A stretch of DNA of 63,066 nucleotides, the filler included, from Octopus bimaculoides (taxonomy: Eukaryota): assembly GCF_001194135.2 (NCBI RefSeq). It is 6 parts of 6 records of this genome, joined end to end, with 100 filler letters (N's around TTAATTAATTAA, not from the genome) between each part and the next. Parts side by side here need not be neighbours in the genome. Positions count along the whole stretch, not along the records: positions 57,211 to 60,267 come from NC_068992.1; 5 more parts are not named here. One strand, 5' to 3'. Below, piece by piece: positions 56,371 to 60,399 of this stretch. The notes below the pieces were generated by a model. The model ran no database searches. It saw only the letters and a list, made by a program, of their open reading frames with translations, and was not told where the DNA came from. Numbering within the stretch: position 1 is the first letter of the stretch; every line of letters starts with the position of its first letter. Made by a program: the position numbers and the translations under genes.

Positions 56371-57429
56371 CCTATATAGTAATAAAACTTGTTTATTATC
56401 CTTTGTGCATTTCGATGCAAGATCCCGACTTACTCTTGTCTGAGATAAGAAATTAGGCCCTTCCATTTCTTCAGGGCCAAGTTGCATTAATTCACAACAG
56501 ACAACATTATTACTTGTAGTTAAATTACATGTGTATAAAAAAAAATTCTAATCAAGTTGTTACGACATGAACATATTGAAACTGCTGGCAATATCGGTTA
56601 AGAAAACCGTTATATAGTAGAGTAACTAAGTACAAATGTTAACCTAGGATATTAAGTAACGACATGCATACGACGCTGTTTCATCAAATAAAATGCATTA
56701 GAAGTTTGAAAAGAAAATAAAAAAAGTAAAACGAAGGAAGAAAAATTACCTATTATAGATCTTAACAGAAATACAAATTAATGGTCAAAGAGAGGTAAAT
56801 CTAGCAAAATAATATTTTTGATCTACATAATTCACTCCATTGTGATTAACCCTGTCAAATAATTATATTTATTTTTAAGTTTACAATAGTTTTGAGACAT
56901 AATTTAAGGATATGCAATCAAGATAAATTATAAATTATAAATTATAAATTATAAAATACAATAAATTATGCCACATTCAAGTTGCAACCATCAAGAATTT
57001 AAATAAACATTACATTAACTTAGTAGTGGAATTAAAATACAATATTAATGAAGGAAGGGATTTAAACGATGAGGCAAACATTTAAATACACACACACACA
57101 CACACACACANNNNNNNNNNNNNNNNNNNNNNNNNNNNNNNNNNNNNNNNNNNNTTAATTAATTAANNNNNNNNNNNNNNNNNNNNNNNNNNNNNNNNNN
57201 NNNNNNNNNNCATGCCACCATGGGGAGCGGACGTTTTAGCTATGATGATCAGGATATGGACAAAAAGAAAAAATGTTGCTGTAAATTTCTTTTAATATCA
57301 GGATATTACCGAGGAATTGAAATAAAGAATTAGAGACGAAACAAAACAAGAATTAAATTTGAAGATGGTGCTACAACCTGGATGGTATCCGTCGACCACA
57401 AATAGCTCCAAAGAAGGAATGATACTCAC

Positions 57430-57557
57430 ACTATCACAGCTAGACCATGGTAATTTTGATTGCATCGAGGCGAAGAAATAAAATAATGTATATGCCATGA
57501 TGACGTTGTAATAAATGGCAACAAAGAGGGAGATCATAGCCATAGAGATTCCAATTC
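57430..57557 (-). CDS. Next coding exon of the same SLC6 transporter (TM3 and start of EL2); GlyT2/amino-acid-transporter-like
   Basis: Translates [43 protein letters not shown] (cf. GlyT2 IYYNVIICYTLFYLFASF..LPW.SC). Acceptor ctactttttcag; phase 1 matches the upstream exon; donor gtgagt at 57429. Confidence 0.93.
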
Positions 57558-57975
57558 CTGAAAAAGTAGAAGATAAATGAGGCCGTTTTTCGAAAACATT
57601 TGTTTTGCTTTAAATATTGATCTTTATTCAGGGTAAACAAAAAATCGTTATTTTTTGGGAGATGGCTAACAATAATCTATTATTGGTACTAATATTTCAT
57701 ATTCAATTTATGCAGTTATGAATGGTGATATAAAGAAACACCAATGAGCAAAGATGTAGGAATATTTTCTCCTTAAATTTGAATTTTTATACCGGGTATT
57801 ACTGTGGAACGAAGAAATAAAGCGCATACGAAAAATGGCGAATGTAGATTTTGGTAGGAATCGTGGAGGAAGAGACGAGGTTGAAAGAAATACAAGACCG
57901 ACTTTTTGGACAGTGATGGTCTGCAACTTTTATAAGCCGCACTTATTTACTCAAATGTACAAGTATTTCATTTAA

Positions 57976-58658
57976 AATAAAAAAAAGGAAAAAGGGGAAA
58001 AAGAACGGGAGACGGTCGGCGGAGGTGCCGACCGAACCAGAAGTCCCTCCGGTGGGAAATGTGCCACCGAAGAGGAATTGTGCCGCTGACAGAGTGGTGT
58101 GACGTGAGGATAATGATTTTTATGTTATCCTGTACCATGGAAGGACTATGAATGAGTTCTTGGCCCACGAGTGCGGCCAAGATAGGAACTACTCGGAGTG
58201 TGCGAGTAGTTCCACATGGCCTCCGCAGGTGGCTGCGGTGGTTATAACAGACAACATGATGACAAAAGTCATAAAAGAATGTAACCTGAAATATTTCTTC
58301 TACCTCGCGGCAAATTCAAGCCTAACAATAGACACTTGTTTGTCAGGGGCAGCATATCCGCTTGCGGAGGGGTGGCGTGAAGAAAATTGTGAAAAATTTT
58401 TAATATATTGAAATTGTGTAAAATTTCTAATATTGATAGTGTAAGAGGTTTGCAACCTCATAAGTGTTTTTTAAAGGAAAAAAAAGAACAATGTTTTCGA
58501 GGGGTTATCAGTCGGCGGGTGCTGGTGCCTCATTATTTGTTTCATCCTTATCACCATCATCTCATTAATGTCCATGTCCAGCCCGCAGCTACTTTATGTT
58601 TGTCTGTCATTGTTTGTCCCCTCTATGTAACGCCGCTAATGGCGAATTTATTGAAATA
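57976..58658 (+). mobile_element. Unclassified hairpin-rich retroposed element in the SLC6 intron
   Basis: 15-bp direct repeat aagtatttcatttaa at 57961 and 58659; about 9 adjacent hairpins at 58013-58368; 3' tail 29/30 identical to the SINE tail at 4442-4471. Confidence 0.6.
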
Positions 58659-58814
58659 AAGTATTTCATTTAATTATTTGATTTAATATTTCTTGAATTT
58701 AGAGAGGCTATTTGATGCAAAGTTCCAGAAAATTCGATGTACTTTTATCAAATTATATTAGACAAACTGAACGCACAATTTATGGAAATTAGTTGATAAA
58801 TAAACAAACTTTAC

Positions 58815-58946
58815 CTTTTGCGCTTGGATTCATTTCCCAAACACCTGTTGGACCCTTTGCTGAGTATTGTCCCATTACTAATTCCATAAAATACATTGGT
58901 TTACCAATCAAAAGCTGAAGCACCAGATAAGCAATGAGAAAGGCCG
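58815..58946 (-). CDS. Internal coding exon of an SLC6 (sodium:neurotransmitter symporter) transporter, TM2 region
   Basis: Translates (A)AFLIAYLVLQLLIGKPMYFMELVMGQYSAKGPTGVWEMNPSAKG, matching the SLC6 pattern GGAFLIPY..G.P..F.E..LGQ...G...VW...P..KG. Acceptor tctcttctttccag and donor G|gtaaag; 132 bp, phase 1-1. Confidence 0.93.
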
Positions 58947-59119
58947 CTGGAAAGAAGAGACAAAACTGTTTAAAACTTAGAAAAGTCGGCTTACATAAAT
59001 AAATAAATATATATGAATAATATACACATACACAAATACGTGTACATGCAGACATACAAATACGTGTATATACACACACACACACAAATACGTGTACATA
59101 CATACAAATATTTATGTAA

Positions 59120-59275
59120 CTTTATTCTTTTGTTTCAGTCATTTGACTGCGGCCATTTGACTACGTTTAGTCGAACAAATCGACCCCAGGACTTATTCTT
59201 TGTTAGCCTAGTACTTATTCTATCGGTCTCCGTTGTCAAGCGATGTTGGGGGACAAACACACGTGTGTATATATA
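59120..59275 (-). mobile_element. SINE family B 3' part
   Basis: tttcagtcatttgactgcggcc...tttagtcgaacaaatcgaccccaggacttattctttg. Confidence 0.82.
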
Positions 59276-59452
59276 TATATATACACACACACATACATAT
59301 TGTATACATATATATATATATACACACACACATACATATTGTATATATATATNNNNNNNNNNNNNNNNNNNNNNNNNNNNNNNNNNNNNNNNNNNNNNNN
59401 NNNNNNNNNNNNNNNNNNNNNNNNNNNNNNNNNNNNNNNNNNNNNNNNNNNN

Positions 59453-59750
59453 ATTAATTATTGGATGTCTTACAGCTGTTTCTGGGATATCCCAAGTGAT
59501 AGATTAGTATCTCCATACACTAGGTATTCCGTCATCAGAGATAAGGTGGGTATGTGGGAATGTTCTAGACAGGGAATTCACAGTTTATAAAGGAATAAAA
59601 TAGTAGACAAAAGAATAAAGAGTAAAACAGAATGCTAACAGGATAATGAAGTTCACAGCTCATCTTCTTCCAGAAGGTATGGAGGTTGGTCCGTACTTCC
59701 GTGAAGGTCCTTAAGTATATTCCCAGGTAAATCCAAGTAGTGTTTTGGCA
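59453..59750 (-). mobile_element. Penelope-like terminal repeat
   Basis: Homologous to 22335-22650; contains a hammerhead motif near its 3' end. Confidence 0.7.
59465..59545 (-). ncRNA. Minimal type-I hammerhead ribozyme motif (palindromic stem III)
   Basis: atct-CTGATGA(59538-59532)-long stem II-GAAA(59482-59479)-CAGCTG-TA-agaca; GUA cleavage triplet. The stem II closing pair is C.A, so this copy may be inactive. Confidence 0.65.
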
Positions 59751-60399
59751 GAATTTTGAATGTAGAGTTCATGTTGAAAGAATAGATTTATCAATATCTA
59801 TCTATCTATCTATCTATCAATCTTTCGCAGCTTTATATTTTCCGACGCTACTCTATCACTTTCTCTTTCTTTCTCTTCCTCTTCATTTTTCCCCCCTCTC
59901 GTTCCTCCTCTGTTTACTACTACGTATCTCTCTTTACCCCTCTCGTTCTTCCTCTGTTACTACTACGTATCTCCATTTCCCCCCTCGTACTTCCTCTCTT
60001 CCTCTCGTTGCTCACCTATTCTTCTACTTCCTCCTTTTGTTTCTCCCTCTACCACTCTCTCTCTCTTCCCCTTACACCGGCATGGTCACATGCTTCCGGT
60101 CAATAATCCTTTTCTTCCTTGGCTATCGCCGAGCAAACACGCGAACTTCGTCCCCACTTTCAAGTTCGTGCCTCACAGCGTTCATACACACATAATTTTC
60201 CCCGTCTGGCCGTATAGCCTTTTCTGTTTGTTTTCCTGTCTTGTCCGCCACTACATTCCTCCATGGCNNNNNNNNNNNNNNNNNNNNNNNNNNNNNNNNN
60301 NNNNNNNNNNNTTAATTAATTAANNNNNNNNNNNNNNNNNNNNNNNNNNNNNNNNNNNNNNNNNNNNACTTTCACTTTCCAGTACTCAATATACACAGT

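What the first reader, a model, noticed from the sequence alone, without database searches (positions are those of the whole stretch)
58013..58368. Dense array of ~9 back-to-back GC-rich hairpins inside an AT-rich SLC6 intron: candidate structured non-coding RNA
Seen: perfect stems cggtcggc/gccgaccg (58013-58034), cggtgg/ccaccg extended by cctc/gagg (58046-58075), aggataa/ttatcct (58107-58131), tcttggcc/ggccaaga (58158-58182), ggaactactcg/cgagtagttcc (11 bp, 58185-58213), ccgcag/ctgcgg (58223-58238), atgac/gtcat (58259-58272) and ccg-CTTG-cgg (58358-58367). There is also a 10-bp stem, ttgtgccgct/agtggtgtga (58078-58102). Spacers are mostly short. Most imperfect pairs are G.U-compatible on the + strand (5 in the 58078 stem, 2 extending the 58107 stem, 2 extending the 58223 stem); one in the 58046 stem favours the - strand. 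Inference: this is folded RNA transcribed from +, antisense to the SLC6 pre-mRNA. I do not recognise it as tRNA, snRNA, 7SL, RNase P/MRP, or a hammerhead/HDV ribozyme. It could be a new structured SINE-like RNA or a LINE 3' UTR.
Basis: partly seen in the sequence, partly recalled or inferred. Interest (0 to 1): 0.72.

Follow-up and report, generated by a model that had tools for sequence, protein, structure and literature searches.

The report
Palindrome cluster in an intron insert
A 240-base run of six or seven short, mostly perfect GC-rich hairpins really exists in this transporter-gene intron, but it folds equally well on both strands and sits in a repeat-flanked non-coding insert, so it is more likely part of an uncharacterised mobile element than a new RNA gene.

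Summary
Six perfect stems of 6-11 bp lie in 58013-58241, against 0.65 expected (0 of 2000 shuffles). Folding z-scores are -7 (+ RNA), -6 (- RNA) and -8.6 (DNA).

The + strand call is not supported. Pairs flanking the perfect stems give 3 G·T against 4 A·C. Only one weak G·U stem (58078-58102) is specific to +.

Nothing known matches: no Rfam family, no tRNA, no pol III boxes, no protein homologue, no Pfam domain in any frame, no terminal inverted repeats.

The island is the GC-rich leading part of a 683-bp block (57976-58658). That block is bracketed by a perfect 15-nt direct repeat, AAGTATTTCATTTAA, matched by 1 of 500 shuffles. The block lies in an AT-rich, lineage-specific intron of an SLC6 gene.

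Best reading, at about 0.5: a young, non-coding insertion derived from a mobile element, whose palindromes belong to the element. A free-standing structured RNA gene stays possible at about 0.1.

No other copy or orthologous intron could be reached with these tools, so copy number, covariation and transcription are untested. A BLASTN search of the source genome would decide.

The parts
57961..57975 (.). Left copy of the perfect 15-nt direct repeat AAGTATTTCATTTAA. It is a candidate target-site duplication. The imperfect similarity extends back to 57945.
   Evidence: D3; 1 of 500 shuffles of the intron gives a 15-mer repeat; 57945-57975 against 58646-58673, score 35, 0 of 300 shuffles
57976..58005 (+). 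A-rich tract (AATAAAAAAAAAGGAAAAAGGGGAAAAAGAA) directly before the island. On the - strand it reads as T5-C4-T5-C2-T9, starting 10 nt after the last hairpin.
   Evidence: sequence read directly
58013..58034 (.). Hairpin 1: CGGTCGGC / GCCGACCG, 8 bp perfect, 6-nt loop
   Evidence: I3; -17.4 on +, -16.2 on -
58046..58075 (.). Hairpin 2: CGGTGG / CCACCG, 6 bp perfect, extended by CCTC/GAGG. It is slightly better on the - strand.
   Evidence: I4; -16.5 on +, -18.8 on -
58078..58102 (+). Weak G·U-rich stem that exists on the + strand only. It is the sole strand-specific element.
   Evidence: -7.9 on +, -1.3 on -. In the full-length fold the segment goes into long-range pairs instead of this hairpin; it does appear in the fold of 58006-58250.
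58107..58131 (.). Hairpin 4: AGGATAA / TTATCCT, 7 bp perfect, 11-nt loop that contains a T5 run
   Evidence: (I9)
58158..58182 (.). Hairpin 5: TCTTGGCC / GGCCAAGA, 8 bp perfect, 9-nt loop
   Evidence: I5; -13.9 on both strands
58185..58213 (.). Hairpin 6: GGAACTACTCG / CGAGTAGTTCC, 11 bp perfect, 7-nt loop
   Evidence: (I1)
58220..58241 (.). Hairpin 7: CCTCCGCAG / CTGCGGTGG, 6 bp perfect core, 9 bp at 89%
   Evidence: (I6)
58251..58375 (.). The fold is not unusual. Long-range pairing back to the island is weak at best.
   Evidence: z about -0.8; energy gain -11.5 against -6.4±2.5 for shuffles; 4 of 150 on +, 16 of 150 on -
58376..58490 (.). AT-rich middle of the insert (GC 0.235). It holds a 27-bp tandem duplication (58384-58433), a 9-bp hairpin (58442-58462) and a T6/A-rich tract (58467-58490).
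   Evidence: I7; D4
58491..58658 (.). Moderately GC-rich (0.435), pyrimidine-rich right part of the insert. Its start (58462-58531) weakly resembles 57961-58034.
   Evidence: (score 68.5 against a shuffle maximum of 68.0, partly driven by A-runs)
58659..58673 (.). Right copy of the 15-nt direct repeat, followed by a 13-bp mini-array (58662-58692)
58815..58944 (-). Upstream SLC6/SNF exon of the host gene (…AAFLIAYLVLQLLIGKPMYFMELVMGQYSAKGPTGVWEMNPSAK-G). The donor GT is at 58814.
   Evidence: PF00209 relatives
57430..57557 (-). Downstream SLC6/SNF exon ([43 protein letters not shown]). The acceptor CAG is at 57560-57558 and the next donor GTGAGT at 57429.

Best explanation
The hairpin island (about 58011-58245) is the GC-rich leading third of a roughly 0.5-0.7 kb non-coding block that was inserted into an AT-rich intron.

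Two boundary readings are possible:
- 57976-58658, bracketed by the perfect 15-nt repeat.
- About 58008-58479, read on the + strand, bracketed by the 9-nt A-rich repeat AAAAAGAAC. This reading ends in a small stem-loop (58442-58462) and an A-rich tail.

Most likely the block is a young copy or fragment of an uncharacterised non-autonomous mobile element of this (probably cephalopod) genome. A non-LTR retroposon or 3'-UTR-like piece is the most probable type. On this reading the row of short perfect palindromes belongs to the element's own sequence. It would be kept because the element's RNA, or a single-stranded DNA intermediate, is recognised, packaged or stabilised through these stem-loops. 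It would then not be a host RNA gene.

Shown: the palindrome cluster, its strand symmetry, the foreign composition, the flanking direct repeat, and the lack of coding capacity or any known RNA family.

Inferred: mobility, the type of element, and any role of the hairpins in its propagation.
For: - Palindrome cluster: six perfect stems against 0.65 expected, 0 of 2000 shuffles.
- Equal local fold excess on both strands and as DNA.
- No G·U asymmetry around the stems. This marks sequence-level palindromes, not an aged, strand-specific RNA.
- Composition: GC is 0.55 in the island and 0.43 in 58491-58658, against 0.24-0.32 in the surrounding intron.
- Flanking direct repeat: perfect 15 nt, matched by 1 of 500 shuffles. 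It extends to about 30 nt imperfect, 0 of 300 shuffles. A flawless repeat together with flawless stems suggests a recent event.
- No coding signal in six frames, and no protein relatives.
- No known RNA family.
- Prior: about 45% of an octopus genome is repeats (PMC12988792), and another SINE-like fragment lies 450 bp away in the same piece.
Against: - Only one copy could be examined, so dispersal in the genome is not shown.
- The A-rich tract lies at the 5' end of the + strand under the 15-nt-repeat boundaries. That is the wrong end for a classical poly(A) retroposon in either orientation.
- No terminal inverted repeats, no tRNA/7SL/5S head and no adjacent reverse-transcriptase remnant were found, so no superfamily can be named.
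- The 15-mer is related to a local 13-bp mini-array. It could reflect minisatellite dynamics rather than a target-site duplication.
- ORF-based searches of public assemblies found no other copy. Those collections evidently lack this genome, so this is weak evidence.
Confidence: 0.5

Rival explanations
1. A free-standing, lineage-specific structured non-coding RNA gene of about 240-260 nt, built as a string of independent stem-loops.

Two orientations are possible:
- On the - strand, where 58264 to 58006 has no T4 run and the last hairpin is followed within 10 nt by T5-C4-T5-C2-T9. That arrangement resembles a pol III terminator.
For: - Very strong fold excess.
- The hairpins persist in the centroid structures.
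- On +, three stems gain from G·U pairs.
- On +, pairing of the island with 58251-58375 is slightly better than shuffles (4 of 150).
- On -, the T-run arrangement follows the last hairpin.
Against: - No Rfam family even at E of 10 or below, and no A/B boxes.
- A T5 run inside the island on + argues against a pol III product.
- There is no strand asymmetry next to the perfect stems.
- The stems are perfect, whereas old functional RNAs usually carry wobbles and bulges.
- The absence of a T4 run on - has roughly a 0.6 chance by my own estimate.
- The T-rich tract is equally an A-rich retroposon-type tract on +.
- The island lies inside a repeat-flanked insert.
Confidence: 0.12
2. Non-mobile, non-functional DNA. 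The palindromes and the block would have arisen locally through replication template switching, fold-back repair, filler DNA captured at a double-strand break, or unequal exchange within the AT-rich mini-array. They would be young enough not to have decayed.
For: - The stems are perfect, strand-symmetric and unrelated to each other in sequence.
- The flanking 15-mer belongs to a local 13-bp repeat motif.
- There is a weak internal duplication, 57961-58034 against 58462-58531, and a 27-bp tandem duplication.
- No transposon hallmarks were found.
Against: - Six or seven independent palindromes side by side within 240 nt would need many separate template-switch events in one spot.
- The GC content of the block is foreign to the intron, which argues for import rather than local origin.
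Confidence: 0.2
3. A cis-acting element of the host gene. It could be a cluster of palindromic protein-binding sites in DNA (an intronic enhancer or silencer). Alternatively, it could be stem-loops in the sense (- strand) intron RNA that influence splicing or the stability of the excised intron.
For: - The hairpins fold on the sense strand too (z -5.9).
- The motifs CCTCCG/CGGAGG (58020, 58046, 58220, 58364) and GAGTG (three times, in or beside hairpin loops) recur (read directly).
- A long pyrimidine tract follows the island on the sense strand.
Against: - No complementarity to the neighbouring exons, so it is not an editing-site partner.
- The motif recurrences are within what multiple testing allows (my estimate).
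- The intron itself is absent in relatives, so any such role would be recent.
- There are no data on expression or binding.
Confidence: 0.08
4. A chance cluster in a GC-rich patch.
For: None beyond the small size of the region.
Against: - 0 of 2000 shuffles reach six hairpins.
- Fold z-scores are -6 to -8.6.
- The rest of the piece has z within about ±2, except over the microsatellites.
Confidence: 0.01

Closest known systems
3' stem-loop tails of non-LTR retroposons (stringent-type LINE/SINE pairs, R2 3' UTR). Comparison made from my own knowledge.
   Same: - Non-coding and GC-rich, with short stem-loops.
- A repeat-flanked insertion of SINE-like size.
- In the + reading, a small stem-loop (58442-58462) lies just before an A-rich end.
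   Different: - Seven consecutive hairpins at the 5' part, rather than one or two at the 3' end.
- No reverse-transcriptase remnant nearby.
- The A-rich tract is at the wrong end under the 15-nt-repeat boundaries.
- No partner LINE is known.
tRNA-, 7SL- or 5S-derived SINEs
   Same: Size class, intronic location and flanking direct repeat.
   Different: - No tRNA-like head.
- No Rfam match to tRNA, 7SL or 5S.
- No B box and only one A-box-like site at chance frequency.
- Internal T5 and T6 runs on +.
Hammerhead-bearing retrozymes and Penelope-like element repeats of invertebrates. Comparison made from my own knowledge.
   Same: - Highly self-paired non-coding retroelement RNA of a few hundred nucleotides.
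- Known from molluscs.
- A possible partial tandem arrangement here.
   Different: - No hammerhead or other ribozyme motif at E of 10 or below.
- The fold is a row of separate short hairpins, not a rod or a branched whole-molecule fold.
Mobile GC-rich palindrome clusters in AT-rich DNA (yeast mitochondrial GC clusters, bacterial REP/BIME arrays). Analogy only, from my own knowledge.
   Same: Short GC-rich perfect palindromes packed together within AT-rich non-coding DNA; strand-symmetric.
   Different: - Those systems are organellar or bacterial.
- Their units are related in sequence, whereas each stem here is different.
- Scans of bacterial/archaeal and viral collections found nothing related.
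Helitron/Helentron terminal hairpins and MITE inverted repeats
   Same: GC-rich palindromes in a non-coding insert.
   Different: - No terminal inverted repeats.
- The insert ends do not read 5'-TC / CTRR-3' on either strand.
- 15 nt matches no target duplication length I know of for any cut-and-paste superfamily (my own knowledge).

Membership tests
Known structured RNA families (Rfam 15: 7SL, 7SK, RNase P/MRP, snRNA, snoRNA, ribozymes, miRNA and others) | Covariance-model match at or near the gathering score | tested here: not met
   No hit within 58000-58300 reached E of 1 or below. The only overlapping hit is VqmR, a bacterial sRNA, at 13 bits against a gathering score of 76 (E 8.9).
tRNA-derived SINE | tRNA-related head with internal A and B boxes | tested here: not met
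   ARAGORN found nothing. No B box with up to 2 mismatches lies in the island. One A-box-like site at 58087 occurs at chance frequency, in 33 of 100 shuffles.
tRNA-derived SINE | Many dispersed copies, each with its own target-site duplication | not testable with these tools
   No eukaryotic genome collection is available. Indirect routes found nothing.
Non-LTR retroposon (LINE 3' UTR or non-autonomous derivative) | Flanking target-site duplication of variable length (about 7-20 bp) | tested here: inconclusive
   A perfect 15-nt direct repeat flanks 57976-58658. However, it overlaps a local 13-bp repeat motif. An alternative 9-nt A-rich repeat (57998/58481) is not significant.
Non-LTR retroposon (LINE 3' UTR or non-autonomous derivative) | A-rich or simple-repeat tail at the 3' end of the element | tested here: inconclusive
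   Under the 15-nt boundaries the A-rich tract is at the 5' end on +. Under the alternative boundaries (58008-58479, +) a short A-rich tail follows a 3' stem-loop.
Non-LTR retroposon (LINE 3' UTR or non-autonomous derivative) | Adjacent reverse-transcriptase or endonuclease coding remnant (for a LINE 3' UTR) | tested here: not met
   Six-frame Pfam scan of the whole intron gave no family at E of 1 or below.
Hammerhead retrozyme / Penelope-like repeat | Hammerhead ribozyme core | tested here: not met
   No hammerhead model hit at E of 10 or below.
MITE / cut-and-paste DNA transposon | Terminal inverted repeats next to a short target duplication | tested here: not met
   Self-comparison found no significant inverted repeat at the insert ends. 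The best long-range inverted match, 57590/58500, has E 0.67.
Helitron | 5'-TC, 3' hairpin followed by CTRR, insertion between A and T | tested here: not met
   Read directly. Neither strand of either boundary model has these ends.
miRNA cluster | Hairpins of about 60 nt with stems of about 20 bp or more | tested here: not met
   Stems are 6-11 bp. The Rfam miRNA hits in the piece lie only on microsatellites at 59027-59352.
SLC6/SNF transporter gene (host) | Exon translations match the SNF family | tested here: met
   The joined exon translation finds PF00209 proteins at 72-80% identity. Splice sites were read.

The most novel reading that the evidence does not exclude
The island is a lineage-specific structured RNA of about 250 nt, made of seven independent stem-loops like beads on a string, and hosted in a lineage-specific intron of an SLC6 transporter gene. 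It would be either antisense (+), or sense (-) and ending at the T-run block right after the last hairpin. It would belong to no described RNA family.
Probability: 0.1. Interest if true: 0.6.

Novelty: new member of a known kind. Interest (0 to 1): 0.3.

Why it matters
If it is a mobile-element fragment, it matters little. It would add one uncharacterised, palindrome-rich non-coding repeat to a repeat-rich genome, and it shows that perfect palindromes inflate RNA-fold z-scores on both strands.

It would matter more if the block proved single-copy and conserved, because it would then be an RNA class with no Rfam relative.

The side observation is a small but concrete case for intron gain-or-loss studies: relatives have one exon where this gene has two exons and the host intron.

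Tried and rejected
1. Collecting copies through translated ORFs of the island.
- Two word-indexed searches found no candidates.
- A full phmmer run against 1.84 billion representatives gave only a chance multi-repeat hit, P0004.
- Exact-sequence look-ups of 12 window ORFs found nothing on record.

2. Orthologous intron through the host gene. The exon query returned only three distant relatives. Their contigs have no intron at this position.

3. DNA pattern scans.
- Metagenomes gave 8 contigs sharing only the 11-bp palindrome, with a different loop and different flanks.
- Viral contigs gave none, or 9 chance hits to a 16-base pattern.
- Bacterial and archaeal genomes gave none.

4. Literature. 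Sequence strings were found in no paper, nor in the supplements of the octopus LINE/lncRNA paper PMC9115989.

5. Relatedness to the neighbouring SINE-like fragment (59108-59262): not significant on either strand.

6. Terminal inverted repeats or another copy within the piece: none.

7. Exon-intron complementarity, as an editing-site partner: none of note.

8. CpG observed/expected as an age or methylation clue: about 0.9 nearly everywhere, so uninformative.

9. Tandem-unit reading (57961-58461 against 58462-58658): only the first 70 nt or so are weakly similar, and A-runs drive much of the score. This is left unresolved.

Full report
**Setting**

Only 57211-60267 is real sequence. On the - strand it carries two exons of an SLC6/SNF transporter gene, at 58815-58944 and 57430-57557.
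- Their joined translation finds PF00209 proteins at 72-80% identity.
- The exons are separated by a 1,257-nt phase-1 intron, 57558-58814. Its ends read GTAAAG… and …TTTTTCAG.
- The intron is AT-rich, at GC 0.24-0.32. The exceptions are a block around 58011-58250 (GC 0.55) and another at 58491-58658 (GC 0.43).

**Check of the observation**

- A script that lists maximal perfect hairpins (stem at least 6 bp, loop 3-12 nt) finds six in 58005-58375. Their stems are 8, 6, 7, 8, 11 and 6 bp.
- Dinucleotide shuffles give 0.65 on average, and none of 2000 reaches six.
- RNAfold gives -153.6 kcal/mol for 58005-58375 on + (z -7.8). It gives -110.5 kcal/mol for 58006-58250 (z -7.05).
- The local hairpins survive in the centroid structures.

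A sliding 120-nt scan of the piece shows the excess is confined to about 58011-58290. The rest of the piece lies within about ±2, apart from the microsatellites near 59211-59330. The observation therefore holds for a 240-nt core with six strong hairpins plus one weak one, not for nine.

**Strand**

This does not hold up.
- The - strand scores z -5.9. In the local windows it scores -5.3 to -6.8, as good as + at -5.5 to -5.8.
- Folded as DNA, the island scores z -8.6.
- Extending the six perfect stems outward by five positions gives 7 Watson-Crick pairs, 3 G·T and 4 A·C, so there is no asymmetry.
- The + advantage comes from three stems: 58078-58102 (half G·U; -7.9 against -1.3 kcal/mol), hairpin 7 and hairpin 4. 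Hairpin 2 favours -.
- The + strand is G-rich (80 G against 51 C), which by itself offers more wobble pairing.
- Long-range pairing of the island with 58251-58375 is only marginally better than with shuffled partners: 4 of 150 on +, 16 of 150 on -.

The signal is a cluster of sequence palindromes. It says nothing firm about which strand is read, or whether either strand is.

**What it is not**

- No Rfam family. This holds at E of 10 or below over the piece and over the insert alone. The miRNA-like sub-threshold hits in the piece sit on (TA/CA)n microsatellites.
- No tRNA or tmRNA.
- No B box, and one A-box-like site at chance frequency.
- No Pfam family in ten ORFs or in stop-tolerant six-frame translations of the entire intron.
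- No protein relatives for the two longest ORFs over the island. One chance hit came from an exhaustive phmmer run.
- No terminal inverted repeats and no other copy in the piece.
- No similarity to the neighbouring SINE-like fragment.
- No complementarity to the flanking exons.
- Nothing related in viral, metagenome or prokaryote collections.

**Surroundings**

A perfect 15-nt direct repeat, AAGTATTTCATTTAA, lies at 57961-57975 and 58659-58673.
- Only 1 of 500 shuffles of the intron yields a repeat that long.
- With gaps, the similarity extends to about 30 nt, which 0 of 300 shuffles reach.
- The repeat brackets 683 bp. In order these are an A-rich tract (57976-58005), the hairpin island, an AT-rich stretch with a 27-bp tandem duplication and a 9-bp hairpin, and a pyrimidine-rich GC-moderate tail.
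- This is the signature of an insertion with a target-site duplication of the length that non-LTR retroposons make.

Three caveats apply.
- The 15-mer is related to a 13-bp mini-array just to its right.
- The A-rich tract is at the 5' end on +, which does not fit a poly(A) retroposon in either orientation.
- A second reading is possible, as a + strand element at about 58008-58479. It would be bracketed by AAAAAGAAC and end in a stem-loop plus an A-rich tail. Its repeat is not significant.

The first 70 nt or so after each of the two A-rich starts (57961-58034 and 58462-58531) are weakly co-linear, including GTCGGCGG…GGTGCC. I leave this unexplained.

**Best explanation**

I put about 0.5 on a young, non-coding, mobile-element-derived insertion whose palindromes belong to the element. 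The support is:
- strand-symmetric perfect stems;
- foreign composition;
- a flawless flanking repeat;
- no coding capacity and no known RNA family;
- a high prior, since about 45% of an octopus genome is repeats (PMC12988792) and another SINE-like fragment lies in the same piece.

The type cannot be named. The block fails the tests for tRNA/7SL/5S SINE heads, hammerhead retrozymes, MITEs and Helitrons, and it has no reverse-transcriptase remnant beside it. That the hairpins serve recognition or stability of the element's RNA or single-stranded DNA intermediate is inference.

**Rivals**

- Locally generated, non-functional palindromes or filler DNA: 0.2.
- A free-standing structured RNA gene on either strand: 0.12. 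On the - strand the island has no T4 run and is followed within 10 nt by T5-C4-T5-C2-T9.
- A cis-element of the host gene: 0.08.
- Chance: about 0.01.

**Limits**

No second copy and no orthologous intron could be obtained. The protein-indexed assemblies evidently lack this genome, and the relatives found have no intron at this position. The other criterion, fold energy no better than shuffles, did not refute the finding.

**Verdict**

This is a real and statistically striking palindrome cluster. The claim of a + strand structured RNA is unsupported, and a mobile-element origin is more likely. Interest is 0.3. One genome-wide BLASTN search would settle most of it.

Noticed in passing
57558-58814 (- strand intron); L001 526-776, L002, L003 484-754: The intron that hosts the island is absent in three genomic-looking contigs of SLC6 relatives (72-80% amino-acid identity). 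There the two exons form one exon, while the flanking acceptor (…ttgcag| / …ttttcag|) and donor (|gtgagt) are kept. The intron is therefore lineage-specific: gained here or lost there.
   Followed up: partly
59119-59262: A SINE-like fragment (…GTCATTTGACTGCGGCC…AGTCGAACAAATCGACCCCAGGACTTATTC…GTTGTCAAGCGATGTTGGGGGACAAACACAC) lies between microsatellites. From memory it resembles the abundant Octopus SINE, which would place the piece in an octopod. No tool verified this. It is not related to the hairpin insert.
   Followed up: partly
59022-59106 and 59262-59352: (AC)n/(TA)n-type microsatellites and 24-39-bp repeats give sub-threshold Rfam hits to mir-297, mir-466, mir-1277 and others (29-45 bits against gathering scores of 81-100). 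These are low-complexity artefacts.
   Followed up: yes
59353-59452: A run of 100 N inside the piece: an assembly gap next to the microsatellite.
   Followed up: no
59795-60210: (TATC)7 at 59795-59823 is followed by an extremely C/T-rich stretch on + (GC skew down to -0.70). That stretch holds a 42-bp tandem repeat of 2.5 copies at 59893-59997.
   Followed up: no
58384-58433 and 58662-58692: A 27-bp tandem duplication (AAATTGTGAAAAATTTTTAATAT / AAATTGTGTAAAATTTCTAATAT) lies inside the insert. A 13-bp mini-array (TATTTCATTTAA-like, 2.5 copies) starts inside the right-hand direct repeat.
   Followed up: partly
57961-58034 vs 58462-58531: Two segments of 74 and 70 nt share the same order of motifs: AAGT-TTT-TTAAA, an A-run, GAAC, GGG, GTCGGCGG, GGTGCC. 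The alignment score just exceeds all 300 shuffles, but A-runs drive much of it. This could be a partial tandem copy of the start of the element. It is unexplained.
   Followed up: partly
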